From Phallusia mammillata (lineage: Eukaryota), in assembly GCA_965637545.1 (NCBI GenBank), contig OZ281494.1, forward strand, positions 5,580,001 through 5,644,000: a DNA stretch of 64,000 bases. Reading direction: 5' to 3'. The notes beneath the pieces were generated by a model that saw only the letters and a program-made list of their open reading frames with translations, was not told where the DNA came from and ran no database searches. The position numbers and the translations under genes were made by a program. The number at the start of each line of letters is the position of its first letter. Position 1 is the first letter of the stretch. Of this stretch, positions 16,695-64,000 are shown piece by piece.

Positions 16695-19600
16695 ATGTTG
16701 TTTATAAACATTATCTTGCTTTCGGTTGTAAGATCGGTTTGGTCGCAAGTTCCTGTTTCAGGTAAGGAAATGCGGTGTGATACCATTTCATGAAATAAGC
16801 TCAACTAAACTAAACTCAATACAAGAGTGTGTTAAATCCACTTTTTATACAGCACCGGTTATTAACTGGGGGTGAATTTACCATCGCAATGTATGTTTTC
16901 TTTTAAGAGAATATTGTGCAAATAAATCTTGGTAATATTGTTAAAAAAATATTTTTACAGTGATTTCAATTTCTTAAAAGTTCCAGCTTTGTGCGTAAAG
17001 GCTATCGTACACCTAAAATAAATTTTAATTCTTGATATTTTTTTCGTGTGTAATACCACATCTTTTTCCGTGTAAATACATCACATGAACTTTAAGTTTA
17101 TGACTGTATTGGCCGAGATTCATTTTTAAATTCGATATGCCATCATACAACAAAGCTCGTAAGCAGTGCTACCAAAACACGGTTAATTTAAATCGGTGCT
17201 GCTATATTTATTGCATTTATGTCGTCTCATAATTTACGATTGAAAATTTTATTTTGCTAAAAGATGTTTCTTTCGACTTAGGTCGATTCTGTCCAAGATA
17301 CGCTTGCGACGATTTCGTTGATTGCTTTCTCGAAGGAGAAACGCAGCTTTCAGCGAATGCTACAGGAACAATCTTGCAAATGTGGAGAAAATTCCGACAA
17401 GAATCTTGTCCACAGGTATGGGATTTTGCCGCAAAAGACAAGGGTGAAGACCTTCGCAAGGGAGAAGTCTTCTACTGCCAATACCTTCTGCAAACGGCCG
17501 AGGTTCAGTTGGAGTTTCTCAAAGCAGGTAACATGGTTTACGCCTAAGCAGTAAGTTGCTTTGCAAAGCTGTATAAGCACTGTACAGACTAATAAGCGTC
17601 ACTTTCTTGATCCTTGCCTAAATGATTACAAGTGTTGTTGTTGTTTTACTTTTGAATAAACTATTCGTTTTTGTCAAAAATAACTGCTTATGAGTTGATA
17701 TTTAACCACATATTCTCGCGATCGTTTTTGTAGAATTTTCATGTATAAGCGTATAACAGACAGCAGTATTAATTTGGCATGTTTTGCTAAAAATCCGTTC
17801 CATCCCGAAGCTACCTGACAACATAGCCATCACAATCCCAAAAAGCCATCAGGTGTTTCATCGAGCCGAAACAGAAGCGATGAGTCCACGAATTGTTTTA
17901 CTTACAAGCTTCTTTTGATGGTTTACAGGCGTTCCAGTCTTTCCTGATTTCCTCATAATGATAAAAAACAACGTTCCGAACTTTGCTGAAGCATCATCGC
18001 GTACTACACAGGGCTGTTACGCTTTACCAGACCCTTCAGTCCTTCTTAGCCCGGCCGCTATTGTCAATCAGAAACAGAATGACATTGTTTCCTGCTTGGG
18101 AAGAAATACATCGAGTCCGTTTTTGGTCTTAAGTAAGTAAACGCTGATGTAGTTTTAACATTTTTGCGTATGCAACTGATTTTGTTACTACCAAAACCTT
18201 TTTAAACCCTAATTAATTTTAGACGTAACTTTAATGCTTGTTTGTGTCTTTTCAATTGAGACAACCCTATTGATTTTCAGACGTGACAGCGAAAAACAAA
18301 ACACACCCGGGTGACAAAAACTCGTACGTTGATGGCTATACCAACAAACCTCCCACTTACACAAACTGGATTACCGGTCCTCTTAACAACACCAAGGACC
18401 ACGCCTGTGCGGCAGTGCGGGTTCTGGACGGACTCTGGACCAACAGAGATTGTTCAAACATAGATGTGGCTTGTAATTACTCGGGTTCGTAAAATAAGAG
18501 ATTAATTAAAACAAAATTAAAACAATATGAAGCAACAAATTAAATCAGATTTTCCTAAACCTAAAACATTAGAAGCTTCAGATTAAAACGTAACAACAAC
18601 ACAAAAGATATGACAACTGTGTTTTATTGTACAGCGGCTGTAACATAATGTCGCTTTTCCGAAACTGTCCGACAATGAGCAATCCCCATAATCTTATTAG
18701 TCGTTTGTGCATACCTGTCAGCTTGAGTTTTCTGTAGGTATTTAAACAAATATTAATGATTCTTTTTCATCATTAGCTTTAGCCACTGGCATGTACTTGA
18801 TTTACCACAGGAATACACCTATACCAAAACTAGGCATGTTAAAACACGTGTTCCGCATGAATCAACAATATACATGTCGCATTACAAGTTCAACACGTTT
18901 CAGTCAAAATAACCATAAACATGTGCAGTGTTACAATGATGTTATGTATGTTTGTTTCATTTCAATGTATTTTGCAGTGTTGCTCTCTCCGGTGGTTGCG
19001 TTGATGCAAGACGCAGTGCTTGGTACATCGGGAGATCCAAATATTCTCATCGGAATCGAACAACAGCTCCGCATAGTGGCAATAAACAATCCCGACTTCG
19101 TGAATCCAGGAGAGATTCTTACCCTCGGATCCGTGCAGCTTTCCATTAACACCACGATTGTCGACAGCAAAGATAAAGATAAAGTATTGGAGGCGAGCTT
19201 AAATCTCACTAGCGCCTTCGTCACTTACCGATTGTCCTTGAAACCGATCAGAAAAAAAGAAGACGAAAAGGTGGATACCCCAGTCATGTCTTTTCCCCGC
19301 AACGTCACTGATTCAATCAAAAGCGATGCCGCAAGTGGGGACGGAGAAAGGCTCGTCTCGCCAGGAACCGTCTCCTTCATAACGGTCTCAGGCTACTACG
19401 GTAAAAACGGGACTTTACCGGGGTTCGTTGACATCCGAACGAAGCGCCCAGAATCGGCTGGGGCTTGCGAAGATCTCATCTTTGCCACAATGAGAACCGA
19501 AGGCAAAAGCTCACTCAAGCTTCGTCCCGTTTGCGCCTTTATCAACCAAACCACCAAGCTGTACAGCACTTCCGGCTGCGTGACGTCATACGACATCGTG

Positions 19601-21628
19601 ACCACCGACGTCAATTGTACGTGCAACCACCTGACCATGTTTGCTGTTCTTTTGGCGGTGAGGAATGTGGTTGTCCCAACCGGAGTATCTGTGAGTGTGA
19701 TTTCTATAAAATAATTTATGATCTCTGTAGCTTAGCAGTTTTGGTGAAAAAGCATTTGTCACCTCCTGAGTTTTGCAGTTTTTAAACAACATAAACATCA
19801 GGGTTGAAACAACATCTCTTAATGCAATTTGTCGCTACAGATGGTGTCTTACACCACTGAATCGTCATCCATAGCTTTCCTTGGCATCACTATTGCTATT
19901 CTACTCTGGTTCAAGGACAGTGTAAAGGGCGATCGTACTCCTGTTCAGATCAACCTGGCTGTAGCACTCCTAATTTTCCATTCCGTCAACTTGTCACATG
20001 ACCTCGCCATCCTGCATGATGAGTTCTGTGTGGCGCACTGTGCAATTAACCACTACTTCTTGCTTGCAACAGGTTGGTATTGAGTTACAATTTATTAAGT
20101 GTTGTTACATATCAGTTGCATTTTGACACGGATCATCAACGTAAAAGATTCATGTTTGGTTGCGGAAATTCAGTCGGCTTCAGCATTTATTTTCAATCAG
20201 TTTCAATTATTTACTTGCCTGCGAATATTTCTTCTACACACAACTACATTTTAATTAAACTCGTTTAAATCATGCATTTGTTTACCATGCATACAGTATG
20301 AAGTTGAAAAAAGCTTTTTTTATGAATTTGTAAGAAAATTTAATCACAAATTGACACACAAATTCCAAGAAGTACAAAACACCTAAAATTTTCTGTAATA
20401 AGTCACAACCCTGCGTATTTGTGCACGATTAATGGATTCTATCTACTTAAGGATGTTGGCTGTGTGTCGAGGGAGTTCGCATCTTCATGGCAACCTCTGA
20501 TCCAGTAGGTTTCAAGGTGCAGAACGAACAGAAGAGATACAGAGTCTTCCTCGTTGTAGGATGGGCAATCCCTCTCGTCATTGTGGGGTCATCACTCGCT
20601 GTGGGGATTCCCCTGGGACTACACATGGAGCCTCAACCCTTTTTCACCCAGTGTCAGCAATATCGCAATGAAACCGTTCTCATCCCCAAGTATGAGAGAT
20701 GCTGGTTGGCTCCTGGTACTCCGATCTTCTACTCCACGGTCGTCGCTCCTCTTGCTGTCATCCTTCTCATTAATCTCATCATCGTGGTGAAGACATCAGT
20801 GGTGATGCTCAACTCGAAGAGGATGCAGAATAGGAATCAGGGACACAGTATGAAGGACATCTCGAGAGCTGGAAAGTCCCTCTTCTTTCTCTTCGTGATG
20901 TTGGGAGGAACTTGGGCAATCGCTTTCTTCACAGGTAAGACTATGTGCAGTATATGTTCATGTTTTTCAGTACATTAGGAATCGAGTTAATATTAGGCAT
21001 GGATATTTAAGTGCCGCTAAACTTTTGTACGGAATCGATTAGCTTTGCACAATGGTGCTCTAGCGCTTCCTGGTTGCCACAATTTTTTTCTGTGATAAAC
21101 CTTTCACCTATTTAGGAATTATATATAGGTCTGTATTAACTGTAATGAACAAAAGATGGAACAGCTAGTGCTTTTAAGGGTAAACCTATTGCACTGGACT
21201 GACTGTTTGTAATTTCACAAAAAAAAACACCAGCCAACGCTGCGAACAAATACAATAAAAAATTATTCACTTAAACTGTTTTCGTAGGAATTGGGAATGA
21301 AGTCACCTCCCAGGTCTTCCTGTACATCAATGCGATTGTGAACGGGGCTCAAGGCGTCATCGTCTTCCTGCTGTATTGCGTCATAAATGACACCATACGC
21401 GAGAAGCTCCTTCTGTTGTTGAACATAAAGAAAAAGAAGAAAAATACCTCGAAGGGAAAAATCACCGAGTCCAAACCAATCAAGAGCGTCCCACGACCGA
21501 AAAAGACGAGTGCGGCCAAGGCCAAAGCGAAGGTGCAGGCCAATGTGAAAGCTGCCAACCGCAAAACCTGTTTGATCAGGGAAAACCCATCTACCGGAAT
21601 AATTCCATTAACAACTGTCGAGCAGTAA
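16695..21628 (+). CDS. Adhesion GPCR copy 1 (signal peptide, Cys-rich module, C-type lectin-like domain, GAIN/GPS, 7TM), intact, ~829 aa
   Basis: Exons 16695-16761, 17282-17527, 17929-18132, 18281-18484, 18978-19690, 19841-20072, 20452-20934, 21288-21628; all GT-AG, phases consistent, total 2490 nt. Signal MLFINIILLSVVRSVWSQ; CTLD YTNWITGPLNN...CAAV..DGLWTNRDC; GPS SGC...CTCNHLTMFAVLL; family-B TM motifs HYFLLATGCWLCVEG, LVVGWAIP, CWL, NGAQGVIVFLLYC. Confidence 0.92.
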
Positions 21629-21821
21629 CGTCAGTAACATTCGTGCAAAACTGGACAAAACACACAACACATACAGAATAAAACAAACACTTGTTTGAAA
21701 TTTAAACACCTTATTTTTTAGACATTCGAATTTGAAAATAATGTTTCAAGTAGAGTCGTTACCGTTTTTCTGCATCTCATCACGTTTTATTTTACTTTTT
21801 GCACGCAAGATGAACATAAAT

Positions 21822-24912: not shown

Positions 24913-27900
24913 ATGTTGTTTGTAAAAATTATCTTGCTTTCGGTTGTAAGATCGGTTTGGTCGCAGGTTGTTCCAGGTGATTTTTGTCGTCTAATATTTA
25001 ACGACTGAAAATTTTATTTTGTTAAAAGTTGTTTTTTTCGACTTAGGCCGATTTTGTCCAAGATACGCTTGCGACGATTTCGTCGATTGTTTTCTCGAGG
25101 GCGAAACGCAGCTTTCAGCCAATGCTACCGGGACAATCTTGCAATTGTGGAGACGATTCAGACAAGAAACCTGTCCAACAGTATGGGATTTCGCCGCACG
25201 AAGCGATGGTGGAGACCTTCGCCCCGGAGAAGTTTACTATTGCCAATACCTTCTTCAAACGGCCGAAGTTCAGCTGGAGTTTCTCAAAACAGGTAACTTG
25301 GTTAACGCCTGAACAGCACAGTTTGCCCTGCACCACAGGAACAATTTGCCTTGCACCACAGGAACAGTTTGCCCTGCACCCCAGGAACAGTTTGCCCTCA
25401 CCAAAACTTATACAAATTAGCGTTACATTCTTGATCCTTGCTTAAATGATTACAAGTGTTGTTGTTGTTCTACTTTTTAATAAAACAATTTGTTTTTGTC
25501 AAAATAACTGCTGATGAGTTTATATTAACCCATAAATTCCCGCGATCGTTTTAATCGTCAGTATTAATTTGGCAATTTTTGCACAAAATCTCATCACCGA
25601 CTTATGCATCTCACCCAGCAGCTACCTGGCACCATGGCCATCTCAATTGCTGCAGGCTTGGTGGTTCATCAAGAAAGAAACAAAATCGACGAGTTCATCA
25701 ACGGTTAAACTCACAAGTTTCATTTGTGTTCGCAGGCGTTCCAGTTTTTCCTGATTTCCTCATCATGGTCAAAAAGAACGTTCCAAACTTTCACTGGGCA
25801 TCGTCGCGTAGCCCACAGGGCTGTTACGCTTTACCGGATCCTTCAATCGTTCTTGGTCCGGCCGCCATTGCCAATAAGAAACAGAATGACATCGTTTCCT
25901 GCTTGGGAAGAAATGCATCGACCCCGTTTCTTGTCTTAAGTGAGTAAACACTGATGCACATGTTTCCCTTTTTTTGCATATACAGCTGATTTTTCTGAAA
26001 ACAAAACAATAAACGAAAGTTGCAGCATGATAAACTACAGAACAAAAACGTCACAAAAAACAAAAGTATAATCAAGACGGCTTCCTCTGAAAACCATACT
26101 ACATACTTTTCCCAAAAGTTGATTTAGTTCATTTAATATTTTTACGCATCGGTTAAATTTATCACTAAATGCAAAGACTTCTGAACGATTTTGTACTTTT
26201 ACACAAAAACTTTATTCACCTTTACATGTTATTTGCATTTTTAGTTTAGTTAAGACTCAATACATTTTTGGGGAGATTTTAAATACTTCTTGTGTCTGTT
26301 CAACCCAGATTTGATTTGACTATTTCAAAATAACCCTATTTATTTCAGACGTGACTTCAAAGAACACAACGCACCCAGGGGACAAAAATTCGTACATTGA
26401 TGGCTACACTAACAAACCTCCCACTTACGCCAAATGGATTACCGGTCCTCTTAACAACACCAAGGACCACGCATGTGCGACAGTGCGAGCTTCAGATGGA
26501 CTCTGGACCAACAGAGATTGCTCAAACATAGATGTTGCATGTAACTATTCAGGTTCGTTTAATCAAGATTAATTGAAACCAAACTACTTAACACCAGCAT
26601 AAAAACAAGACAAATACGTTTTACTACACAACAACTATAACATAACACGTACCGCTTTTCTGACTCAGTCTGGCAATAAGCACCACACCTAACGTCATAA
26701 TTTGTCTGCACATTGTCTGTTTTGTGAAATTTGGTTACATGAAATAAATAGTAATGATTCTTTTTTATCAGCATTAGCTAGTGGCATATACACATATGTT
26801 CTTGATTCACCACAGGAATGTAGTTATAGCAAAACCACCAGTTCAATACGTTTCAGTCAAAATGCCCATAAACATGTGCAGTGTTACAATAATGTAGTGT
26901 ATGTATATTTTATTTCGATGTATCTTGCAGTGTTGCTTTCTCCGGTGGTTGCATTGATGCAAGACGCAGTTGCAGGTACATCGGGTGATCCAAATGTTCT
27001 CATCGGAATCGAACAACAGCTTCGTACAGTGGCAATAAACAATCCCGACTTCGTGAATCCAGGAGAGATTCTTACCCTCGGATCCGTGCAGCTTTCCATT
27101 AACACCACGATTGTCGACAGCAAAGATAAAGATAAAGTATTGGAGGCGAGCTTAAATCTTACTAGCGCCTTCGTCAGTTACCGATTGTCCTTGAAACCGA
27201 TCAGAAAAAAAGAAGACGAAAAGGTGGATACCCCAGTCATGTCTTTTCCCCGCAACGTCACCGATTCAATCAGAAGCGATGCCGCAAGTGGGGACGGAGA
27301 AAGGCTCGTCTCGCCAGGAACCGTCTCCTTCATCACGGTCTCAGGCTACTACGGTAAAAACGGGACTTTACCGGGGTTCGTCGACATCCGAACGAAGCGC
27401 CCTGAATCGGCTGGGGCTTGCGAAGATCTCATCTTTGCCACAAAAAACATCTCCGGCAAAAGCTCACTCAAACTTCGTCCCGTTTGCGCTTTCATCAACC
27501 AAACCACCAAGCTGTACAGCACTTCCGGCTGCGTGACGTCATACGACATGGAGACCAATGACGTCAACTGTACGTGTAACCACCTGACCATGTTTGCGGT
27601 TCTATTGGCGGTGAGGAATGTGGTTGTCCCAACCGGAGTATCTGTGAGTGAGATTTCTAAAAAATAATTTATGGTCTCTGTAGCTTAGCATTTTTGGTGA
27701 AAAAGCATTTGTCACTTCTTAAGTTTTGCAGTTTTCAAACAACATAAACATCAGGGCTGAAACAACATCTCTTAATGCAATTTGTCGCTACAGATGGTGT
27801 CTTACACCACTGAATCGTCATCCATAGCTTTCCTCGGCATCACTATTGCTATTCTACTCTGGTTCAAGGACAGTGTAAAGGGCGATCGTACTCCTGTTCA

Positions 27901-29582
27901 GATCAACCTGGCTGTAGCACTCCTAATTTTCCATTCCGTCAACTTGTCACATGACCTCGCCATCCTGCATGATGAGTTCTGTGTAGCTCACTGTGCAATC
28001 AACCACTACTTCTTGCTTGCAACAGGTTGGTATTGAGTTACAAATTATTAAGTGTTGTTACATATCAGTTGCATTTTAACACGGACCAGAAACGGAAAAG
28101 ATCCATGTTTGGTTGCGGAAATTCAGTCGGCTTCAGCATTTATTTTCAATCAGTTTCAATTATTTACTTGCCTGCGAATATTTCTTCTACACACAACTAC
28201 ATTTTAATTAAACTCGTTTAAATCATGCATTTGTTTACCATGCATACAGTATGAAGTTGAAAAAAGCTTTTTTTATGAATTTGTAAGAAAATTTAATCAC
28301 AAATTGACACACAAATTCCAAGAAGTACAAAACACCTAAAATTTTCTGTAATAAGTCACAACCCTGCGTATTTGTGCACGATTAATGGATTCTATCTACT
28401 TAAGGATGTTGGCTGTGTGTCGAGGGAGTTCGCATCTTCATGGCAACCTCTGATCCAGTAGGTTTCAAGGTGCAGAATGAACTGAAGAGATACAGAGTCT
28501 TCCTCGTTGTAGGATGGGCAATCCCTCTCGTCATTGTGGGATCATCACTCGCTGTGGGGATTCCCCTGGGACTACACATGGAGCCTCAACCCTTTTTCAC
28601 CCAGTGTCAGCAATATCGCAACGAAACTGTTTTCATCCCCAAGTATGAGAGATGCTGGTTGGCTCCCGGTACTCCGATTTTCTACTCCACGGTCGTCGCT
28701 CCTCTTGCTGTCATCCTTCTCATTAATCTCATCATCGTGGTGAAGACATCAGTGGTGATGCTCAACTCGAAGAGGATGCAGAATAGGAATCAGGGACACA
28801 GCATGAAGGACATCTCGAGAGCAGGAAAGTCCCTCTTCCTTCTCTTCGTGATGTTGGGCGGAACTTGGGCAATCGCTTTCTTCACAGGTGAGACTATGTG
28901 CAATTTATGTTCATTTTTTTTTCAGTACATTAGGAATCGAGTTAATATTAGGCATGGATATTTAAGTGCCGCTAAACTTTTGTACGGAATCGATTAGCTT
29001 TGCACAATAGTGCACCAGCGCTACCTGATGGTTGCCACAATTTTTTCCTGTGATAAACCTTTCACTTATTTAGGAATTATATATAGGTCTGTATTAACTG
29101 GAATGAACAAAAGATGGAACAGCTAGTGCGTTTTAGGGTAAACCTATTGCACTTTACTGACTGTTTGTAATTCCACAAAAAAAACACCAGCCAATGCTGC
29201 GAACAAATACAATAAAATATTGTTCACTTAAACTGTTTTTACAGGAATTGGGAACGAAGTCACCTCCCAGGTCTTCCTGTACATTAATGCGATTGTTAAC
29301 GGGGCTCAAGGCGTCATCGTCTTCCTGCTGTATTGCGTCATGAATGACGTTATACGAGAGAAGCTCCTTCTATTGTTGAACATAAAGAAAAAGAAGAATT
29401 CCTCGAAGGGAAAGAGCACCGGGTCCAAACCAATCAAGAGCGTTCCACGACCGAAAAAGACGAGTGCGGCCAAGGCCAAAGCAAAGGTGCAGGCCAATGT
29501 GAAAGCTGCCAACCGCAAAACCTGTTTGATCAGGGAAAACCCATCTACCGGAATAATTCCATCACCAACTGACGAGCAGTAA
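24913..29582 (+). CDS. Adhesion GPCR copy 2, intact, ~827 aa
   Basis: Exons 24913-24976, 25047-25292, 25736-25939, 26349-26552, 26931-27643, 27794-28025, 28405-28887, 29245-29582; total 2484 nt, open; same motifs as copy 1. Confidence 0.92.
25318..25402. repeat. 23-bp minisatellite (~3.6 copies) in intron 2 of copy 2
   Basis: Unit CACCACAGGAACAGTTTGCCCTG at 25331, 25354, 25377 plus a partial unit before; not seen in the other copies. Confidence 0.85.
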
Positions 29583-32584: not shown

Positions 32585-32919
32585 CTAGTAATTTGCTGTT
32601 TGTGTTATGCCGGAAGTTGGATTTTCCCTGATCAAACAGGTTTTGCGGTTGGCAGCTCTCACATTGGTCTGCACCTTTGCTTTGGCCTTTGCCTCACTCG
32701 TCATTTTCGGTCGTGGGACGCTCTTGATTGGTTTGGACTCGGCGCTCTTTCCCTTTGAGGAATTATTCTTCATTTTCTTTATGTTCAACAATAGAAGGAG
32801 CTTTTCGCGTATGACGTCATTCATGACGCAATACAGCAGGAAGACGATAACACCTTGAGCGCCATTCACAACCGCATTGAGGTAAAGGAAGACTTCGGAG
32901 GTGATTTCGTTTCCGATTC
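32585..32919 (-). pseudogene. Orphan last exon (TM7 + C-tail) of an inverted adhesion GPCR
   Basis: Acceptor at 32921/32920; GIGNEITSEVFLYLNAVVNGAQGVIVFLLYCVMND...TANY stop; flanks ~31870-33115 parallel ~46990-48230 (copy 4) but no exons 1-7 follow. Confidence 0.85.
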
Positions 32920-33169
32920 CTGCAAAAAGAGAAATAAAAACTGTCAGTAAAGTGCAATTGGTTTATCCCCAAACGTACTAGCTAGCTGTTCGCCTTATGT
33001 TTATTAATGGTAATACAGACCGAAAATATCATGTACTTCACAAATATAGTAAAAAGTTTTATCACAGGAAACAAATGTGGCAACTAAGCAACGCTAAAGC
33101 GTCGTTGTACAAAGCTAATTGACTAAGTATAAGCGTTTAACAGCACATACAAGTCCATGCATAATATTA

Positions 33170-33260
33170 ACTTCTGATTTCCTTATTACGAAAAAAAGAA
33201 CGTTTCGAACTTTGCTGAAGCATCATCGCGCACTCCCGATGGCTGTTTTCATTTTAACGA
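33170..33260 (+). pseudogene. Decayed fragment of GPCR exon 3
   Basis: TTCCTTATTACGAAAAAAAGAACGTTTCGAACTTTGCTGAAGCATCATCGCGCACT resembles 17949-18005 (FLIMIKNNVPNFAEASSRT). Confidence 0.55.
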
Positions 33261-47655: not shown

Positions 47656-50600
47656 TCACTGCTCGTTATTTGTCGTTTGTGTTATGCCAGAAGTCGGGTT
47701 TTCCCTGATCAAACAGGTTTTGCGGTTGGCGGCTTTCACATTGGCCTGCACGTTCGCTTTAGCCTTGGCCTCACTCGTCATTTTCGGTCGTGTGAAGCTT
47801 TTGATTGGTTTGGACTCGGTGCTTTTTCCCTTCGAGGAATTTTTCTTCTTTTTCTTTATGTTTAACGATAGAAGGAGCTTCTCTCGTATGATGTCATTCA
47901 TGACACAATACAGCAGGAAGACGATGACGCCTTGAGCCCCGTTCACAATCGCATTGATGTACAGGAAGACATGAGAGGTGACTTCATTCCCAATTCCTGC
48001 GAAAACAGTTTAATTTTTTATTGTATTTGTTCGCAGCGTTGGCTGGTGTTTTTGTGGAATTACAAACAGTCAGTAAAGTGCAATTGGTTCACCCTAAAAC
48101 GCACTAGCTGTTCCATCTTTTGTTCATTAATGGTAATGCAGACCTAAAATATCATGTAGTTCACAAACAAAAAGAAACGTTTTATCACAGAAACAAATGT
48201 GGCAACCCGGCAACGCTAAAGCGTCGCTAATTGATTCCGTACAAAAGTTTAACGCCATTTGAAAATCCATGCCTATTATTAACTCGATTCCTGATGGACT
48301 GAAAAAGATATGAACATAAACTGCACATGGTCTTACCTGTGAAGAAAGCGATTGCCCAAGTTCCTCCCAACATCACAAAGAGAAAGAAGAGGGACTTTCC
48401 AGCTCTCGAGATGTCCTTCATGCTGTGTCCCTGATTCCGATTCTGCATCCTCTTCGAGTTGAGCATCACCACTGATGTCTTCACCACGATGATGAGATTG
48501 ATGAGAAGGATGACAGCAAGAGGAGCGACGACCGTGGAGTAGAAGATCGGAGTACCGGGAGCCAACCAGCATCTCTCATACTTGGGGATGAAAACCGTTT
48601 CGTTGCGATATTGCTGGCACTGGGTGAAAAAGGGTTGGGGCTCCATGTGTAGTCCCAGGGGAATCCCCACAGCGAGTGATGACCCCACAATGACGAGAGG
48701 GATTGCCCATCCTACAACGAGGAAGACTCTGTATCTCTTCTGTTCGTTCTGCACCTTGAAACCTACCGGATCAGAGGTTGCCATGAAGATGCGAACTCCC
48801 TCGACACACAGCCAACATCCTTCATAAACATAAAATTACTGGTTATATACAACTTTATAGTCTACATTAAGTAATTCAAGACGGGCAAGAAAATGTTCAG
48901 AACTGGGCTTAACATCACGCAAGGCTTCGAAACTTCAGACTAACCTGTGGCAAGCAAGAAGTAGTGGTTGATTGCACAGTGAGCTATACAGAACTCATCG
49001 TGCCTAATGGCGAAGTCGTGCGACAAGTTGACCGCGTGAAAAATTAGAAGTGCAACAGCCAGATTGATCTGAACAGGAGTACGGTCGCCCTTAATAGAGT
49101 CCTTGAACCACAGTAGAATAGCAATGGTAATGCCAAGGAAAGCTATAGATGACGACTCCGTGGCGTAAGACACCATCTGAAACAAAAAAATTAATAAAAT
49201 ATGTTGTTTTAATCTCGTATGCAAAACAGAATCAGTGGCATATTCCTTACTGAAAGTAGAAGTAGAACAATAGAGATCATAAAGTAGTACATAGAAATCA
49301 CACTCACCGTAACTCCCGCTGGAATAACCACGTTCCTAACCGCCAAAAGAACCGCAAACATGGTCAGGTGGTTGCACGTACAATTGACGTCATTTGTCTC
49401 GATGTCATATGACGTCACGCAGCCGGAAGTGCTATACATCTTGGTGGTTTGGTTGATAAAGGCGCAGACCGGACGAAGCTTGAGCGAGCTTTTGCCGGAG
49501 ATGTTGTTTGTGGCAAAGATGAGATCTTCGCAAGCCCCAGCCGATTCAGGGCGCTTCGTTCGGATGTCGACAAACCCCGGTAAAGTCTTGTTTTTATCGA
49601 AATATCCTGAGACTGTTAAGAAGGAGACCGATCCTGGCGATACGAGCCTTTCTTCGTTCGCGCTTAATGGGCCGCTTTCTATAGAATCAGTGACGTTGCG
49701 GGGGAAAGCCATGACCGGGGTTAGCACGTCTTCACTTTTCTTAATCGGTTCCAAGGACAATCGGTAGTTGACAAAGGCGCTAGTGAGGTTGAGACTCGCT
49801 TCCAGTAATTTATCTTTGCGGTTGACTTTCGTAGCGTTGATGGAAAGCTGCACGGTTCCGAGGGAAAGAATCTCTCCTGGATTCACGAAGTCGGGATCGT
49901 TTATTGCCACTGTGCGAAGCTGTTCCTCGATTCCGATGAGAAGATTTGGATCACCTGAAGTACCGAGCACTGCGTCTTGCATCAACGCAACCACCGGAGA
50001 GAGCATCACTACAAGATAGATTCAAATAAAACTCAACTGCATGCACATCACAAAAATACAATGTCAAGTTTGCTGCAGTTTGTGGAGACTGTTTTGATAT
50101 GAGTCACTTTTCATTCAGTCACTTTCAACAAACTGAAGTGTCGTAGCTTGGTAACACGGGCCTATACAACCAAAGTGTTGTCGCCAGCCGCACTGACAAG
50201 AGAGCCTGCAGCTAGCTTCCACATTGTTGTTATATTGCTTACGGTTAGTCATATTGACGTGTTTTCACCAACCGTAAAATACCTAAAACGCGTATAACAT
50301 GCCGTTTTTTCTTTATCCGCTTTTCTGTGGCAAATCAACAACTATTTCGTGTGTGCATTTAAACTGATTCACAACTGAAATAGCATTTTTTTCAGTCCAT
50401 GTTTCACTCAGACAAACGAAAATCGATGGTTTTGTGAATACTCGTAACCAGTGTCAACCTATAACAATCTGCTGACTCTAAACGTATAGTGTTTCAGTTG
50501 TTTTTCACACACCTGAATAGTTACATGCAACATCTATGTTTGTGCAATCTCTGTTGGTCCAGAGTCCGTCCACATCTCGTACAGCTGCACATGTGAATCC

Positions 50601-53600
50601 ATTAGTGTTGTTGAGAGGACCAGTAATCCAGTTGGTGTAAGTGGGAGGTTTGTTAGTGTAGCCATCAATGTACGAGTTTTTGTCACCTGGATGCGTTATG
50701 TTCTTTGTAGTCACGTCTGAAATGTTTTGAAAATAACTGAAAACAGGTTGTAAAGGCCCAAGAAATAATAAAGATACTTCTAAAATGAACAAAGACTTTT
50801 TCTGAAAGTACGAAAAAGTTTTTAGGTTACGTCTAACACACAAACGTTTTTCGTAGTTTTATTAAAGTTTACAAAAGTAATCCACCAGGTTTTTACAATT
50901 GTTAAAATGTTTGACAGGTTTTTGCCTTCAAGTATTGACCAAAAAATACTCACAACTTCCAGTTTTATAAGGAAAACTGACAGCAGGGGTATACTTATGT
51001 ATAAAGTTTATTTCAATCTCACTTGATAACTCTGATTTTTGACATGTTTTTAACACTTATCAATAACCTTCATTAGTTTTGTTGGGCGCCAGAGAACAAA
51101 GTCAGTTAAAACTTATAAACTATATCATCCTCTACTTACTTAACACCAGGAACGGGCTTGAGGTATTTCTTCCCAAGCAGGAAACGATGTCATTCTGTTT
51201 CTGATCGGCAATGGCGGCCGGGCCCAGAACGATTGAAGGGTCTGGTAAAGCGTAACAGCCCTGGGTTGTTCGCGACGATGCCGCGTCAAAGTTTGGAACA
51301 TTCTTTTTGACCATGATGAAAAAATCAGGAAAAACTGGCACGCCTGCGATCAAAAATAAAAGCTTGTGAGTTTAACATTTAATGGGCTGATATATTTTGT
51401 TTTCTGTTTGAAGAAACACCAAGCTTGATGGAATTGTGATACCCACGGTGTTAGGAAGCTTCGGAGTGCAATGTGTAAGCCAGCGATGAAATTTAAACCT
51501 ACAACTGCAGTGAAAATTTTCCAATTAACACTTGACTGCTGTACGGTGATACACAAAAAGTTTATTGGCGATTACCAAATATGTGGGTTCAGTGCTGGAT
51601 TAACCTATAAGCAATATAAGCACGTGCTTAGGGCATCAAGTAAAGTAGGGGCACCACAGAAATGGTTTCTAGGCAAATTATTAAATCTAACAAAAAAACT
51701 ATATTCAAAATGTAATGAAAATGAATAAGTTCTGTTTATAAAGCAAGAAAATTAAATTAAATAACTGACAAAAGGGATTGATTGCGTGCTATATGACGTA
51801 ACAACGCTGCGTTGTTCTGTTTGTTAAAACCTGAAACAGCCAAGACTCATGGGTGCCCAACCCGTCGATCGCGATCGACTGGTCGATCTCGGACTGATAT
51901 CAATTCGATCGCGAAGGATTCAGAAAATTATTTAAAATACTTGTTTTGTAATGCGTTTTTAGGGAATGTTGCCCTACATAGATGACTTTATTGTGAAAGT
52001 TATTCTTTAGGATTTGTTGATATGTTCACACCACAAATACTCAGTCGACGCATTACGTCGCAAAAGTAATAGTTACGTCACAAAAATAATAATTACAGCA
52101 GTAATGGTTACTTTGTGCTGGTACTTTTCTATTATCAAGATTAGCATCGGATGAATTATAAAAAAATTAAGTTCAATGCAGTGTGAAAAGTCACACCCAA
52201 ACTGCGATAAAAAACGTAAAAGAGGGCTCGGAAAATGCTAGTTGTAATACACACATAGTCTTGCATTATCTTGTTAGTTTGTATTGGAATGGTAGATCCC
52301 GGAGTCGATGTTGAGTCAAAAAAGATTGGGCACCCCTGGTCAAGACAGTAAGGCAATGCTTAGTTAATAGCATGCTGTTGAAAAAATATTTGCGTATGTG
52401 GCAAACGTAAATTAAGCACGACGCTAATACTAGTATGTTTTACAATTGGGCAACAGTGCTGAGACTGGGGAAGGCAGCAGCAAAATTAGGCGTTTTAATT
52501 GAGTTTTGGAGTATTTCTGACATTCTGAAACAAATCTGCAAGTTTAATATCAGCTAAGCTTATAGTCTATTACCCGTGCTGTATATTAAGTTAATATCGA
52601 AATCTCGATGAATAATTTTGTTTTTACGTTTATATTTCGAATGAAAAATGGTGTAAGGGGCACCAAATTGTTTTAGTACTTAGGGCCTCTAATGGTGTTA
52701 ATCCGGCCCTGTGTGGGTTGATTGAAAGTAATAATTAATTGTTGACATAAACGTTACAAAATAATAATTAAAACCACTAAAGTAAGCGTTAAAGCACAAT
52801 CAAGGGTAAGACGTAATTTTGTTTATGTCTGGCGGATGACAAACTGTTCTGTATGACTTTGCAAACTAATAAGTTCAGTTACCTGCTTTAAGAAACTCCA
52901 ACTGAACCTCGGCCGTTTGCAGAAGTTGTTGGCAGTACTCAGCTTCTCCTCTGCGATAGTCGTAATTTTGAGGCCCACCAAGAACCAATTGAGTATACTG
53001 AGGACAGGTTTCTTGCCGAAATTGTCTCCACATCCGCAAGATTGTGCCGGTAGCATTAGCTGACAGCTGCGTTTCACCCTCGAGAAAGCAATCCACGAAA
53101 TCGTCGCAAGCGTATCTTGGACATAGTTGCCCTGAATTCAATGCAAAATGAATTAACATTTTAAGTCGGAAACAAGTGTAAAAAACGAATCCAATAAAAT
53201 AAACCGAGTATATTTTTAATCAATCCTGCAGCTACTATTAGAGCTGCACATTATATTTTTGTGTGACATTATAACTTACACAAAGAGAAAAGATCAGAAA
53301 CTCACGGAGCTAACTAATAAGCCTTGTAAAAACGTATAGTCTAAAATAAATCTCCGAGGTTTACGTTTGATTTTTAGAAAACCATTTTCTCAGGCAAAGT
53401 TTTCTCCTGGTTTGATTAACATACATTAATTCATTTAACAAAAATGTCGTTCAACTGGTGTTAATGTTAAACAAAAATACTAGTTGTTTCTATCCATAAC
53501 TTGTATTTTCGCTGACGTTTCGTCCACCAGAACGGTAGTTCTTCAGAGCAATGAATGACGAATGCAAGCAACAAGCGAAAGGCACAAGAACAGCGTTTCG

Positions 53601-54199
53601 CTTGTTGCTTGCATTCGTCATTCATTGCTCTGAAGAAGTCCTACCGTTCTGGTGGACGAAATGTCAGCGAAAATACAAGTTATGGATAGAAACAACTAGT
53701 ATTTTTGTTTAACATTAACACCAGTTGAACGACATTTTTGTTAAATATGCAACCTGGTGGACGAAAACGCCTGTCCAGCATTTTTTATACATTAATTCCG
53801 CAAACAAACATATGTCAAGGGATAAGTTTGGATCAATTTAAAGCCAGTGGTTGAAGAAAAAAGATACAACGTCGGTTACTCAATTGTAGGGAGAACAAAA
53901 GCGGTTTAGAGGCAAAGACAGTTCATATCACCAGTTGGAGGAAAGTATGGCGACACATTTGGATTGAATATTCAGGAAGTACCTGCGCAACGTTAAAACG
54001 TCTTGGGGCACAAAATGGCAAAACGCGCAACAGCTACAACGTTTCGTTTTTAGGCGGGCAGATAATTGAGCAGGATATAGGATTAATTAGTAAAGACAAA
54101 ACCATTACTAGAGTCAAACACCAAACCTTATTCACCTGCGGCAAATTGCGACCAAACCGATTTCACAACCGACAGTAGAATAAAGTTCGCTACCAACAT
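47656..54199 (-). CDS. Adhesion GPCR copy 4 (inverted, most divergent), intact, ~825 aa
   Basis: Exons 54199-54136, 53131-52883, 51343-51140, 50716-50513, 50008-49308, 49176-48945, 48819-48337, 47996-47656; total 2478 nt, open; signal MLVANFILLSVVKSVWSQ; GPS CTCNHLTMFAVLL. Confidence 0.9.
51590..52711. mobile_element. Non-autonomous hAT element in intron 2 of copy 4, containing a nested MITE
   Basis: TIR CAGTGCTGGATTAAC / GTTAATCCGGCCCTG; perfect 8-bp TSD TGTGGGTT (51582-51589, 52712-52719). Confidence 0.88.
51848..52338. mobile_element. hAT MITE nested in the 51590-52711 element
   Basis: Ends CATGGGTGCCCAAC / ATTGGGCACCCCTG; near-TSD GCCAAGAC/GTCAAGAC. Confidence 0.75.
53509..53551 (-). 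ncRNA. Hammerhead motif with broken stem II
   Basis: UUGCU-CUGAAGA-A-C[UACCGUUCUGGU]GGAC-GAAAC-GUC-AGCGA; GUC of the 5' strand of stem II is deleted relative to the other copies. Confidence 0.55.
53625..53670 (+). ncRNA. Minimal type I hammerhead ribozyme motif (stem III variant)
   Basis: UUGCU-CUGAAGA-A-GUCC[..]GGAC-GAAAU-GUC-AGCGA; C-to-U at 53662 turns a C-G pair into U-G. Confidence 0.65.
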
Positions 54200-59471: not shown

Positions 59472-59700
59472 AATATAATTATTTTTCATGGTATCACGCT
59501 GTTCTTGCGCCTTTCGCTTGTTGCTTGCATTCGTCATTCATTGCTCTGAAGAAGTCCTACCGTTCTGGTGGACGAAACGTCAGCGAAAATACAAGTTATG
59601 GATAGAAACAACTAGTATTTTTGTTTAACATTAACACCAGTTGAACGACATTTTTGTTAAATATGCAACCTGGTGGACGAAAACGCCTGTACAGCATTTT
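59472..59700 (+). mobile_element. PLE-type terminal repeat, first of a direct pair
   Basis: Direct repeat of 59980-60170; 3' part matches 53596-53790. Confidence 0.8.
59541..59586 (+). ncRNA. Minimal type I hammerhead ribozyme motif
   Basis: Stem I 59541-45/59582-86, CUGAAGA 59546-52, stem II GUCC/GGAC extended by ACC/GGU, GAAAC 59574-78, GUC 59579-81 (predicted cut after 59581). Confidence 0.8.
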
Positions 59701-59979
59701 CTATTATCAGAAGAGATTATAATGAAGCGAGTCTATCAGCGGTCAAAGGGTATGTCAAGGCAGTCGATATCGGTACCATCAAAAAAGAATATGGCCACAT
59801 CAGATTTGGATAGACTACATTACGAACTTAGGCTCAATCGCTCCTAGGGGGCAGCTCGATGTACCAACGGTTTGAAAAGGAATCCACCCAAGACGCCCGA
59901 CCAATTCATCAAATTTCGGACATTAGTGCCGCTTCATCGTTTTGCAACGGACGCTACTATTTTCGGATGGCCTTTGTTA

Positions 59980-60170
59980 TAATATAATTATTTTTCATGG
60001 TATCACGCTGTTCTTGCGCCTTTCGCTTGTTGCTTGCATCCGTCATTCATTGCTCTGAAGAAGTCCCACCGTTCTGGTGGACGAAACGTCAGCGAAAATA
60101 CAAGTTATGGATAGAAACAACTAGTATTTTTGTTTAACATTAACACCAGTTGAACGACATTTTTGTTAAA
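59980..60170 (+). mobile_element. PLE-type terminal repeat, second of the pair, abutting GPCR copy 5
   Basis: Ends ...GACATTTTTGTTAAA and runs directly into AATTCGTATTGGTC, which matches intron 2 of copy 3 at ~39333. Confidence 0.8.
60050..60095 (+). ncRNA. Minimal type I hammerhead ribozyme motif
   Basis: Same as 59541-59586 except for the bulged base in stem II; GUC at 60088-60090. Confidence 0.8.
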
Positions 60171-60426
60171 AATTCGTATTGGTCAAAACTGATTGTTGCT
60201 CATCATTTCCCAAAATCGTTTTTATTGACTGTTTATTCACTTGCATACAGCAGATATTAGTATTTGTGTTGCTTAAAAACTTACTGATATGCGTTTAACA
60301 CCGGAGCTATGTGACACAATAGGTGTCAGAATTCCGGCAAGCTTGGTGTTTCATTAAGTAATAAACGAAAACGACGAGTTTATCAAGTGTTATGTTATAA
60401 TCACATACGTTTATTTGTGTTTAAAG

Positions 60427-63400
60427 GCGTGCCAGTTTTTCCTGAATTTCTCATAATGATCAAAAAGAACGTTCCTAACTTTGCTGCAGCATCATGGCGT
60501 ACTACCGATGGCTGTTACGCTTTACCGAATCCTGCACTTATCCTTGGCCCGGCCGCCATTGCCAATAAGAAACAGAATGACATCGTTTCCTGCTTGGGAA
60601 GAAAAGCATCGAGTCCGTTTCTAGTCTTAAGTAAGTGAACGCGGACACACATCAATACCTTTTTTGCATATCTAACTGATTTTACTGCTCACAAAACAAT
60701 AAACGAAAGATGCACCAAGATAAACTATGAAACAGATAAGGAGAGTTTTTGGTACTCACAATATATCAACTATACCTATGTTGTTGTCCTGAATTGTTGG
60801 TAAAAATCTAATGGTAACAAAAACATTACTAGAAACAGCTATAAAATCAAGGTGGCTTCCTCTGTAAACTATACCACATACTTTTACCCCAAAAATTGAT
60901 TTAGTTTATTATAGGCGTCCATTTAATATTTTGACGCCCTGGTTAAATTTATCACTAAATGTATTTCTACACAAGACAACGATGTTTGTTCACTTCTACA
61001 CGACAACTTTATTGACCTTCAGATGTTAATCATTTTTTTACGTTTAGTCGAAACTCAAACCATTTTTCAACGAGATTTCAAAACTTCTTTGATTTTTAAG
61101 TAAACTCCCTTCACTTTTACACAAAAACCCTCAATCATTTCAGACGTCAACTCCAATACTTCTTGTGTCTTTTCAACCGAAATTTGATTTGACTTTAACA
61201 CTATGACCCTATTAATTTTCAGACGTGACTACAAAGAACATAACACACCCAGGAGACAAAAATTCGTACATTGATGGCTACACTAACAAACCTCCCACTT
61301 ACACAAATTGGATTACTGGTCCTCTCAACAACATCGAAGGCCACTCCTGTGCAGCAGTGCGGGATGTGGACGGACGCTGGACCAACAGAGATTGCACAAA
61401 CATAGATGTTGCATGTAAATACTCAGGTTGATCTAACAGAACATTAATTTAAACGCAAATCACTTGACTCGGCACTGATAAATATACGACAACTTTTCGT
61501 ATTTTTTACTTGGTATAACAATATGAAACACCGAATTGAATAAAGTTTTGCAAAAATTAATAACATGCACATGTTTATGTACTTCGTGATTGCCTCTAAT
61601 TTGTTTTGGCGTAAGTTGTTTTGCCACTATCTTGAAAAATTGCATTCGAAAAGCGTTAGATAAAAACCTAACAACAGCATAAAAACAAAACAAGTACGTT
61701 TTATTACACAACGACTGCAACATAATGCCGCTTTTCCGAAACAGTCTGACAATCTTCCCTAACCTTATACTTTGTTTTCGCATCTCTGGCAGCTTGAATA
61801 TTGTAGTTATTTAAATAAATATTAGCGTTAGGCACAGACATGCACACTTGTCCTTGATTCACCACAGGAATGCAATTATAGCAAAACCATGCATGAATTA
61901 ATAATATAAATGTCGCAATACGAGTTCAATACGTTGCAGTCAAAAACCCCATAAACATGTGCAGTGTTACAATGATGTAGTGTATGTATATTTCATTTCA
62001 ATGTTCTTTGCAGTGATGCTCTCTCCGGTGGTTGCGTTGATGCAAGACGCAGTGCTTGGTACATCAGGTGATCCAAATGTCCTCATCGGAATCGAACAAC
62101 AGCTTCGCACAGTGGCAATAAACGATCCTGACTTGGTGAATCCAGGAGAAATTCTTACCCTCGGAAGCGTGCAGCTTTCCATCAAAACTTCGACAATCAA
62201 ACGCAACAGAAAAAAGGAAGTATTTGAGTCGAGCCCAAATCTCACTAGCGCTTTCGTCAATTACCGATTTTCCTTACATAACATTAAACAAAGACACGAA
62301 ACATTGAATACCCCCGTCATGTCCTTTCCCCGCAACGTCACCGATTCAATCAGAAGCGATGCCTCAAGTGGGGACGGAGAAAGGCTCGTCTCGCCTGGAA
62401 CCGTCTCCTTCATCACGGTCTCAGGCTACTACGGTAAAAACGGGACTTTGCCAGGGTTTGTCGACATCCGAACGAAGCGCCCTGAGTCCACTGGAGTCTG
62501 CGAAGATCTCATCTTAGCCACAACGAGAACCGAAGGCAAAAGCTCGTTGAAGTTTCGTCCCGTTTGCGCCTTCATCAACCAAACCACCAAGCTGTACAGC
62601 ACTTCCGGCTGCGTGACGTCATACGACACCGAGACGAATGACGTCAATTGTACGTGTAACCACCTGACCATGTTTGCGGTTCTATTGGCGGTGAGGAACG
62701 TGGTTATCCCAACCGGAGTATCTGTGAGTGTGATTTCTATGCAACAATTTATAAACTCTGTAGTTTTGCTTTCACATTTTGGTGAAAAGCATTTGCCACT
62801 TTTTAAGTTTTGCAGTTTTAAAACAACGTAGATATCTGGGTTGAAATAACATGCCTTAATGCAATTTCTTGTTACAGATGGTGTCTTACGCCACTGAATC
62901 ATCATCTATAGCTTTCCTCGGCATCACGCTTGCTATTCTACTCTGGTTCAAGGACTCTATTAAGGGCGACCGTACTCCTGTTCAGATCAACCTGGCTGTA
63001 GCACTCCTAATTTTCCACGCGGTCAACTTGTCACATGATCTCGCCATCAGGCATGATGAGTTCTGTGTAGCTCACTGTGCAATCAACCATTACTTCTTGC
63101 TTGCCACAGGTTAGTGTAAAGTTTCAAACTACAGAGTGTTGTTAAATATAGGATGCATTCAAACTCGGAAAATTAGCAGAAAAATTGATGTTTGGTTGTG
63201 AACTTGAAATAAAATCGACTTCTGCATTTTTGATGAGCAATTTCAAGTATTTAATTGTCTGCTAGTATTTTTTTCATTACATTTACATTAAACTCTCCGG
63301 TAAACTTGTTTAAATCGTTCAAGTGCTTGTTTGTACTATTGTGCAAAAAGTTTCAATCACAAATTGGCACACGAATGATTAAAAATACAAACTGTGTAAA

Positions 63401-63957
63401 ATTAAATCTTTTTTTGACATCATCTGTGATAAGTTACTACCCTGCGTATTTATACACAAACAAATCTTTTTAAGGATGTTGGGTGTGTGTCGAGGGAGTT
63501 CGCATCTTTATGGCAACCTCTGATCCGGTGGGTTTCAAGGTGCACAACGAACAGAAGAGATACAGAGTCTTCCTCGTTGTAGGATGGGCTATCCCTCTCG
63601 TCATTGTGGGAGCATCACTTGCTGTGGGGATTCCCCTGGGACTACATATGGAGCCTCAACCCTTTTTCACCCAGTGCCAGCAATATCGCAATGAAACCGT
63701 TCTCATCCCCAAGTATGACAGATGCTGGTTGGCTCCCGGTACTCGCATCTTCTACTCCACGGTCGTCGCTCCTCTTGCTGTGATCCTCCTCATCAATCTC
63801 ATCATCGTGGTGAAGATTTCAGTGGTGATGCTCAACTCGAAGAGGATGCAGAATCGGAATCAGGGACACAGCATGAAGGACATCTCGAGAGCTGGAAAGT
63901 CCCTCTTCTTTCTCTTCGTGATGTTGGGAGGAACTTGGGCAATTGCTTTCTTCACAG
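60427..63957 (+). CDS. Adhesion GPCR copy 5, 5'-truncated (exons 3-7 open; exon 8 beyond window)
   Basis: Exons 60427-60630, 61223-61426, 62014-62723, 62878-63109, 63475-63957, all open; near-identical to copy 3 including introns at an offset of ~20840 bp; no exon 1 or 2 upstream. Confidence 0.82.
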
Positions 63958-64000
63958 GTAAGACTGTTGTTTATGTTAATATCTATTTCAGTCCATTAGG

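What the first reader, a model, noticed from the sequence alone, without database searches (positions are those of the whole stretch)
16695..64000. Expanding array of lectin-adhesion GPCRs with an unrecognised N-terminal module carrying one hypervariable loop
Seen: exon 2 of four copies encodes an 82-83 aa module with a near-invariant frame (CPRYACDDFVDCFLEGETQLS.NAT.TIL..W..FRQE.C ... YCQ.LLQTAEVQLEF.K.G) around one 21-22 aa segment that differs in every copy: PQVWDFAAKDKGEDLRKGEVF (17410-17472), PTVWDFAARSDGGDLRPGEVY, AGAWDFAANALHDTDYCPGEAY, PQYTQLVLGGPQNYDYRRGEAE. The 7TM exons are almost identical between copies. Established: adhesion GPCRs signal through GAIN/7TM and bind ligands through distal N-terminal domains. 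Inference: a family with a constant signalling core and a diversified, Cys-bracketed recognition loop, as expected of an immune, allorecognition or chemosensory receptor cluster. I do not recognise the module as any known domain.
Basis: partly seen in the sequence, partly recalled or inferred. Interest (0 to 1): 0.82.

Follow-up and report, generated by a model that had tools for sequence, protein, structure and literature searches.

The report
Sea-squirt adhesion receptors with orphan tip
A small, fast-turning-over cluster of adhesion-type G-protein-coupled receptor genes, probably from a sea squirt, carries at its outer tip a previously undescribed 82-residue five-cysteine module whose one loop is the fastest-evolving part of the protein, but the evidence that this loop is adaptively diversified is only moderate and about half the copies are broken.

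Summary
Four exon-2 copies lie at the stated places. Each is a symmetric phase 1-1 exon of 246 or 249 nt with a near-invariant frame around one variable segment between the fourth and fifth cysteines.

The genes are adhesion GPCRs: signal peptide, orphan module, C-type-lectin-like domain, GAIN/GPS, seven-helix domain. The whole genome holds only nine module copies, all within about 285 kb of one contig.

The module matched nothing in Pfam, PDB sequences, the ESM Atlas, 1.84 billion protein representatives or fold searches. Its model is low-confidence and helical.

The frame is under purifying selection (omega about 0.2). The loop runs at omega 1.45-1.8. Loop omega above 1 is not robust (p=0.10 once an unalignable stretch is masked). 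Site-class tests favour a few loop sites at omega 2-6 (p=0.00015-0.03), but recombination inside exon 2 weakens them.

The "constant" 7TM core is partly due to gene conversion. Copies C and G are broken, and E and H are truncated. No RNA evidence was found.

Earlier scan notes describe other adhesion-GPCR arrays in this genome, but not this module.

Verdict: a lineage-restricted variant of a known receptor class. The immune or allorecognition reading remains unproven.

The parts
16695..21628 (+). Gene A, apparently intact, 8 exons: 16695-16761 (signal peptide), 17282-17527 (orphan module), 17929-18132 and 18281-18484 (C-type-lectin-like domain), 18978-19690 (GAIN/GPS), 19841-20072, 20452-20934, 21288-21628 (7TM and tail)
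   Evidence: Open frames and GT/AG sites read directly. Pfam finds GPS, 7tm_2 and a weak Lectin_C. Exons 2-4 are all phase 1-1.
17410..17475 (+). Variable Cys4-Cys5 segment of copy A (codons 43-64 of the in-frame exon-2 piece)
   Evidence: AF2 gives pLDDT below 50 at residues 48-55.
24913..29582 (+). Gene B, apparently intact. Exon 2 is 25047-25292 and the loop is 25175-25240.
   Evidence: tblastn of copy-A exons; splice sites and absence of stops.
32606..33255 (.). Gene fragments: an exon-8-like piece on the minus strand (32917-32606) and a partial exon-3-like piece (33178-33255)
38425..43789 (+). Gene C, probable pseudogene. Exon 2 (38911-39159, loop 39039-39107) is intact. Exon 4 has a TGA at 40533-40535, and exon 5 has lost 1 bp in an A-run near 41370, compared with copy E.
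47656..54199 (-). Gene D, apparently intact, on the minus strand. Exon 2 is 53131-52883 and the loop is 53003-52935. The first half of its loop cannot be aligned with the other copies.
   Evidence: A 98.5-99.3% identical second copy (D2) lies about 165 kb away.
60427..64000 (+). Copy E: exons 3-7 in the window (exon 8 lies just beyond it). It is 98.7% identical to C from 60157 onward. No exon 1 or 2 was found upstream.

Best explanation
This is a lineage-restricted subfamily of adhesion GPCR genes, in what earlier scan notes call the ascidian Phallusia mammillata. It evolves by tandem and block duplication, pseudogenisation and gene conversion. Each intact gene encodes a signal peptide, an orphan 82-83-residue five-cysteine module (probably helical, with a conserved N-glycosylation sequon), a C-type-lectin-like domain without the sugar-binding motifs, a GAIN domain with an intact H-L|T cleavage site, and a secretin-type 7TM domain. 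Shown: the module frame is under strong purifying selection, while the segment between Cys4 and Cys5 is the least constrained part of the protein, tolerates length change, and evolves at or somewhat above the neutral rate. Shown: the 3' halves of the genes are homogenised by gene conversion. Inferred: the module forms the membrane-distal tip of the ectodomain, possibly disulfide-linked to the lectin-like domain, because each has an odd number of cysteines (five). Inferred: its Cys-bracketed segment is a surface loop at or near a ligand-contact face that has diverged between paralogs. Inferred: ligand engagement would signal through the usual tethered-agonist route. The diversity seen here is between paralogs, not a demonstrated hypervariable allelic system.
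For: Architecture and splice phases. Nine module copies in the genome, all at C1:5.597-5.882 Mb. Selection: NG86 frame omega 0.07-0.5 against loop 0.3-1.6; maximum-likelihood partition omega 0.22-0.25 against 1.45-1.8, different at p of 4e-14 or smaller. M2a beats M1a at p=0.00015-0.03, with sites 43, 44, 51, 56 and 60, all in the loop; the lectin-exon controls are negative (p=0.84 and 1.0). The loop is the top-ranked variable window. A distant paralog (the L009 gene, 7TM 50% identical) keeps all five cysteines, the sequon and the TAEVQL helix, but has a 13-residue loop interrupted by a phase-1 intron directly after Cys4. Gene conversion. Orphan status.
Against: Loop omega above 1 is not significant once D's unalignable stretch is masked (p=0.10). 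Three independent close pairs give loop omega 0.51. Exon 2 is mosaic: the nearest neighbours of the 5' frame and of the loop disagree, about half of the informative site pairs fail the four-gamete test, and a PHI-like test without D gives p=0.014. Recombination of this kind is known to inflate M2a tests. Only seven sequences were available, the codon code is my own, and site calls are naive posteriors. Copies C, G and H, which were used in the tests, are broken or truncated. The structure model is weak (pLDDT 64), so 'surface loop' and 'tip' are inferences. No RNA evidence exists. The zero-hit protein search did not return even this genome's own proteins, so its coverage of ascidian proteomes is uncertain.
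Confidence: 0.6

Rival explanations
1. The variable segment is simply a tolerant linker. It drifts neutrally and takes up indels, while the rest of the module is constrained. No adaptive diversification or ligand contact is involved.
For: Pairwise loop omega centres on 1 (0.3-1.6) and pooled close pairs give 0.51. The test for omega above 1 is not significant after masking (p=0.10). Loop dS is about equal to frame dS in pairs without D. Loop length differs (13, 21 or 22 residues) and a paralog has an intron there. AF2 confidence is lowest there. Recombination can explain the M2a signal.
Against: M2a is preferred over M1a across topologies and subsets (p=0.00015-0.03), while the same code finds nothing in the lectin exons. 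In pairs A-G and C-H the loop dN (0.35 and 0.31) exceeds the divergence of the adjacent intron (0.17 and 0.12). Several loop positions (W, F, A, D, G, E) are conserved, so the segment is not a free linker.
Confidence: 0.35
2. The module is a structural neck, cap or oligomerisation element for the lectin-like domain, comparable to the helical necks ahead of collectin or tetranectin C-type lectin domains. The odd cysteine would form an inter-domain or inter-chain disulfide. Ligand contact would lie elsewhere and the loop would be peripheral.
For: The fold is predicted as all-helical, and its last long helix runs straight into the lectin-like exon. There are five conserved cysteines in the module and five in the lectin-like exons. 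The last helix is the best conserved part even in the distant paralog. The collectin and tetranectin comparison is from my own knowledge.
Against: No sequence or fold match to any coiled-coil neck or other known domain. No disulfide map or complex prediction was made. This reading does not explain why the loop is the fastest-evolving window of the protein.
Confidence: 0.25
3. The cluster is largely a decaying, unexpressed gene family, and the pattern is a relic of past constraint.
For: C has a nonsense codon and a frameshift, G has a 40-nt deletion in exon 4, E lacks exons 1-2, H has only exons 1-3, and further fragments exist. No RNA contigs matched. No protein in the large library carries the module.
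Against: A, B, D, D2 and F keep all eight exons open with canonical splice sites. Low omega holds in the frame, lectin, GAIN and 7TM exons. The sequon and the GPS site are conserved in all copies.
Confidence: 0.12

Closest known systems
Ascidian 'unclassified Adhesion' GPCRs (Ciona intestinalis repertoire; PMC2396169)
   Same: These are lineage-specific adhesion GPCRs with no vertebrate orthologue, densely clustered, and 21 of the 30 Ciona Adhesion receptors had no recognisable N-terminal domain beyond GPS. The genes here have the same GAIN/GPS plus 7tm_2 body, and this genome holds at least 115 matches to the 7TM exon.
   Different: Here the unrecognised N-terminus is resolved into a defined, selectively constrained 82-residue five-Cys module followed by a lectin-like domain. 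No Ciona counterpart of the module was found in the protein search, though that search's coverage is uncertain.
Amphioxus adhesion GPCRs with a C-type lectin domain (PMC2246102)
   Same: A C-type lectin domain sits on an adhesion GPCR N-terminus in an invertebrate chordate.
   Different: That paper reports no additional orphan tip module. The lectin-like domain here is sub-threshold in Pfam (19.8 bits against a cutoff of 22.6 on a half domain) and lacks the EPN/QPD and WND motifs.
Ciona s-Themis / v-Themis self-sterility receptors (PMC7018956)
   Same: These are ascidian surface receptors with a GPS site and a hypervariable N-terminal region used for self/non-self recognition.
   Different: Themis variability is allelic and multi-allelic, the receptor is polycystin-like (REJ, LH2) and is paired with a polymorphic ligand gene. 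Here the variation is between paralogs, the body is a 7tm_2 adhesion GPCR, and no allelic data or partner gene is known.
Helical neck plus C-type lectin domain of collectins and tetranectin (from my own knowledge)
   Same: A helical element immediately precedes a C-type lectin fold.
   Different: No sequence or fold match. The module here is cysteine-rich and appears to be a four-helix unit rather than a coiled coil.

Membership tests
Adhesion GPCR (class B2) | Secretin-like seven-helix domain (Pfam 7tm_2) | tested here: met
   Exon 6 gives E=3.4e-5 and exon 7 gives E=1.2e-19 to PF00002, covering profile positions 3-224. Seven hydrophobic helices can be read across exons 6-8.
Adhesion GPCR (class B2) | GAIN domain ending in a GPS motif with the H-L|T cleavage site just before TM1 | tested here: met
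   PF01825 GPS at E=1.8e-8. The C-x-C-N-H-L-T-M-F-A-V-L-L motif is conserved in A, B, D, D2, E, F and G. The GAIN fold itself was not modelled.
Adhesion GPCR (class B2) | Autoproteolysis and tethered-agonist signalling | not testable with these tools
   Needs biochemistry.
C-type lectin-like domain (CTLD) | Significant match to the CTLD profile or to solved CTLDs | tested here: inconclusive
   Exon 4 alone scores 19.8 bits, E=0.0014, below the 22.6 cutoff. A profile of exon 4 finds CTLDs in 12 of its 13 PDB hits (mannose receptor E=0.0011, MBP-C 0.024, aggretin, conglutinin); the weakest hit (E=0.86) is a ribosomal protein. Exon 3 matches nothing. The joined domain was not searched.
C-type lectin-like domain (CTLD) | Calcium and carbohydrate site motifs (EPN or QPD, and WND) | tested here: not met
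   Reading the exon-4 alignment against the known motif positions gives P-L-N and W-T-N at those places. Sugar binding by the canonical mechanism is therefore not expected.
Hypervariable immune or allorecognition receptor system | Excess of non-synonymous change (omega above 1) in the recognition segment | tested here: inconclusive
   Loop omega is 1.8 (p=0.004), or 1.45 (p=0.10) after masking. M2a p=0.00015-0.03. Recombination is present and close pairs give omega 0.51.
Hypervariable immune or allorecognition receptor system | High allelic polymorphism in populations | not testable with these tools
   Only two DNA-like runs from one study hold the locus. They show no differences in exon 2 of A.
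Hypervariable immune or allorecognition receptor system | Expression in immune, gamete or contact tissue | not testable with these tools
   No RNA run held the stretch.
Any described protein domain (for the 82-residue module) | Sequence or fold match | tested here: not met
   Pfam: none at E up to 1. Word search: none. ESM Atlas features: none. 1.84-billion-protein profile search: 0 hits. PDB profile search: best E=4.4. Foldseek PDB: best E=3.2. VIA-align wide: best Z=7.6, generic helices. Atlas shape search: unrelated helical proteins.

The most novel reading that the evidence does not exclude
The five-cysteine helical module is a new ligand-recognition domain confined to ascidians. Its Cys4-Cys5 loop is kept diverse by positive selection while gene conversion homogenises the rest of the genes. 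The cluster would then be a paralog-diversified recognition system (microbial, gamete or self/non-self) read out through adhesion-GPCR signalling.
Probability: 0.2. Interest if true: 0.7.

Novelty: new variant of a known kind. Interest (0 to 1): 0.42.

Why it matters
Most adhesion GPCRs have no known ligand, and ascidians have expanded them massively with N-termini that domain databases cannot read. This case resolves one such unreadable N-terminus. It is a compact, clearly constrained, apparently orphan domain with a single fast-evolving loop, sitting on a receptor whose signalling half is kept uniform by gene conversion. If the loop proves to be a specificity determinant, the cluster would be a small, tractable model of how a constant signalling chassis acquires diversified recognition heads in a chordate relative. 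If it does not, this is an ordinary example of birth-and-death evolution in a large gene family.

Tried and rejected
1. Word-index protein searches with exon 2 and exon 7 found nothing. The length window of that tool excludes full-length receptors, so these blanks carry little weight.

2. The spliced full-length protein was never joined, searched or folded. All searches were done exon by exon by reference. X-plus-lectin and whole-ectodomain models are therefore missing.

I did not attempt it by any other route and used pairwise and likelihood methods instead.

4. I checked whether D's odd loop half is a frameshifted version of the others or was copied from elsewhere. Ungapped and gapped DNA alignments show no relation, and the genome holds that 69-nt stretch only in D and D2.

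5. I looked for the module in other adhesion-GPCR paralogs of the genome. The profile and the L009 query find only the nine copies. Inspection of three paralog loci found no similar exon.

6. RNA evidence: four runs were laid. Two behave as genomic DNA because they cover introns evenly, and two presumed RNA runs gave nothing.

7. I considered a relation of the loop's C-x-x-x-W-D start to the hormone-receptor (HRM) motif. Pfam gives no HRM hit at E up to 1, so I rejected it.

8. No complex-prediction job was sent, because no binding claim is made.
Full report
**1. What is there**

The window is G000:C1:5580001-5644000 of a 240-Mb eukaryotic assembly. Earlier agents' notes name the organism as the ascidian Phallusia mammillata. 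I did not verify this myself.

Reading copy A with its GT/AG sites gives an eight-exon gene:
- 16695-16761: signal peptide
- 17282-17527: module
- 17929-18132 and 18281-18484: lectin-like domain
- 18978-19690: GAIN/GPS
- 19841-20072, 20452-20934 and 21288-21628: 7TM and tail

Exons 2, 3 and 4 are all phase 1-1, the classic layout of shuffled extracellular domains.

Pfam finds GPS (E=1.8e-8) and 7tm_2 (E=1.2e-19 and 3.4e-5). It gives a sub-threshold Lectin_C hit on exon 4 and nothing on exon 2 or exon 3. A profile of exon 4 hits C-type lectins in 12 of 13 PDB matches (mannose receptor, MBP-C, aggretin, conglutinin); the thirteenth and weakest is a ribosomal protein (E=0.86). The positions of the EPN and WND motifs read P-L-N and W-T-N. 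The domain is therefore lectin-like in fold, not a demonstrated lectin. The H-L|T GPS site followed by T-M-F-A-V-L-L is conserved in every copy.

Everything was done exon by exon by reference.

**2. The family**

A profile of the module finds eight strong copies in the whole genome, plus one weak match at C1:5.882 Mb described below. The eight strong copies all lie in C1:5.597-5.798 Mb. In contrast, the 7TM exon has at least 115 matches genome-wide at 45-62% identity, so this is one small subfamily within a very large adhesion-GPCR expansion.

Mapping all exons gives the following:
- **A, B, D and F:** intact.
- **D2:** a 98.5-99.3% copy of D over more than 13 kb, about 165 kb away. It is either a very recent duplication or an uncollapsed haplotype.
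- **C:** a TGA in exon 4 (40533) and a 1-bp loss in exon 5, compared with its 98.7% twin E.
- **G:** a 40-nt deletion in exon 4 that shifts the frame.
- **E:** exons 3-8 only.
- **H:** exons 1-3 only.
- **Fragments:** loose pieces lie next to a Ty3/gypsy-type element.

This is birth-and-death turnover rather than plain expansion.

**3. A distant member**

The weak ninth hit (L009, C1:5.88 Mb) belongs to a gene whose 7TM is only 50% identical to A but which has the same domain order.

In that gene the module is split by a phase-1 intron with a perfect AAG|GTAAGG donor directly after Cys4. A second small exon supplies Cys5 and a last helix almost identical to that of the cluster copies. All five cysteines and the N-x-S/T sequon are kept. 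The Cys4-Cys5 segment is only 13 residues, against 21-22 in the cluster.

The module is therefore older than the cluster, and the variable segment is a length-tolerant join between two conserved halves.

**4. Is the module known?**

Every search was negative:
- Pfam at E up to 1
- the word-index search
- ESM Atlas features
- a profile search of 1.84 billion representatives, with zero hits at E of 0.001 or less
- a PDB profile search

AlphaFold2 on the eight-sequence alignment gives a four-helix model of low confidence (pLDDT 64, below 50 at residues 48-55). Foldseek against PDB, VIA-align wide and the Atlas shape search return only generic helical bundles.

One caveat applies. The big search did not return this organism's own proteins either, so its coverage of ascidian proteomes is uncertain. 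'Orphan' here means 'no match in what could be searched'.

**5. Selection**

Synonymous differences are spread through the frame.

- **Nei-Gojobori:** frame omega is 0.07-0.5, highest in pairs involving the broken copies. Loop omega is 0.3-1.6.
- **My own codon-likelihood partition model:** omega_frame is 0.22-0.25 and omega_loop is 1.8, or 1.45 when D's unalignable half-loop is masked. The two differ at p of 4e-14 or smaller. Loop omega above 1 has p=0.004 unmasked and p=0.10 masked. A separate synonymous rate for the loop is not needed (p=0.28 and 0.66).
- **Site classes:** M2a beats M1a at p=0.00015-0.03 over three topologies and three subsets. The extra class has omega 2.2-5.9, and the high-posterior sites 43, 44, 51, 56 and 60 are all in the loop.
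- **Controls with the same code:** p=0.84 and 1.0 for the two lectin exons, and p=0.04 for the GAIN exon.
- **Other evidence for fast loop change:** the loop is the top-ranked variable window of the whole coding sequence. In pairs A-G and C-H its dN (0.35 and 0.31) exceeds the divergence of the neighbouring intron (0.17 and 0.12).

Three points count against a strong claim:
- Three phylogenetically independent close pairs pool to loop omega 0.51.
- The exon-2 tree is poorly supported.
- Exon 2 is mosaic. C shares its 5' frame with H but its loop with F, and H shares its loop with G. About half of the informative site pairs fail the four-gamete test, and a PHI-like permutation test without D gives p=0.014. 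Recombination is a known cause of false positives in M1a/M2a tests.

My reading is that the loop is clearly released from the constraint that holds the frame. Positive selection at a handful of its positions is plausible but not established.

**6. The constant core**

Exon 7 dS is 0.09-0.2 for all pairs, against 0.3-0.9 in exons 2-4. A and B are 94.7% identical over 2.9 kb including introns, but only 75-86% identical around exons 1-3.

The uniform 7TM half therefore reflects gene conversion as well as purifying selection (omega 0.03-0.13). Loop types persist while their flanks are homogenised. This could mean selection for loop diversity, or it could simply reflect where conversion tracts happened to end.

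**7. Expression and alleles**

Both cover introns evenly, so they behave as genomic DNA. They show no differences in exon 2 of A. Presumed RNA runs of the same species gave nothing. Expression and allelic diversity remain untested.

**8. Mechanism proposed**

- **Shown:** gene structure, domain order, the selective regime, turnover and gene conversion.
- **Inferred:** the module is the membrane-distal tip of the receptor.
- **Inferred:** its five cysteines and the five in the lectin-like exons suggest one inter-domain disulfide.
- **Inferred:** the Cys4-Cys5 segment is an exposed loop on or near a ligand face that differs between paralogs.
- **Inferred:** signalling follows the general adhesion-GPCR scheme of GAIN cleavage and a tethered agonist.

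**9. Comparison with what is known**

Ciona was reported to have 30 Adhesion GPCRs, 21 of them with nothing recognisable in the N-terminus beyond GPS (PMC2396169). Amphioxus has adhesion GPCRs with C-type lectin domains (PMC2246102). Ciona s-Themis combines a hypervariable region with a GPS site for self-recognition, but on a polycystin-like body and through allelic variation (PMC7018956).

The present genes are members of the adhesion GPCR class, with both defining features met. They carry a new tip domain. They do not meet, or could not be tested for, the criteria of a hypervariable recognition system.

**10. Verdict**

This is a real, well-defined, lineage-restricted variant of a known receptor class with an apparently orphan domain. 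It is of moderate interest. The immune or allorecognition reading remains a hypothesis, at about 20%.

Noticed in passing
window 33888-37515 (+): Two overlapping long ORFs encode reverse transcriptase, RNase H and integrase (Pfam RVT_1, RT_RNaseH, rve, Integrase_H2C2). This is a Ty3/gypsy-type LTR retroelement lying between genes B and C, next to loose receptor-gene fragments. I only observed it.
   Followed up: partly
window 4579-6961 (+): A string of ORFs in a GC-richer stretch. The last ORF carries the hAT-family C-terminal dimerisation domain (E=2.5e-12), so this is probably a decayed hAT DNA transposon.
   Followed up: partly
window 2905-3817: A tandem repeat of a roughly 191-bp unit at 99% identity, seen as self-BLAST offsets of 191, 382 and 573.
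   Followed up: no
window 59471-59664, 59980-60173 and 53433-53788: A roughly 194-bp element occurs twice in direct orientation just upstream of truncated copy E. It also occurs, in direct and inverted copies, inside intron 1 of gene D (96-98% identity). This may mark the rearrangement that removed E's first exons.
   Followed up: partly
L026:2897-3552 (-), genome C1:5.880-5.882 Mb: In the distant paralog the module is encoded by two exons. A phase-1 intron sits exactly where the variable loop starts in the cluster copies, and the loop has only 13 residues.
   Followed up: yes
window 44813-58332 versus C1:5789547-5803000: More than 13 kb including gene D is present a second time about 165 kb away at 98.5-99.3% identity. 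This is either a very recent segmental duplication or an uncollapsed haplotype in the assembly.
   Followed up: partly
window 20075-20449: One contig of run X1 joins 20075 to 20449, skipping 373 nt with non-canonical ends GG..TT. The joint is offset by 3 nt on each side from intron 6 (20073-20451). It is unexplained and may be a paralog with a shorter intron or a graph artefact.
   Followed up: no
L019:3973-5357 (genome C1:5647973-5649357): An inverted fragment of exons 7-8 and a partial exon 3 lie between truncated copies E and H. This suggests that one rearrangement broke both genes.
   Followed up: partly
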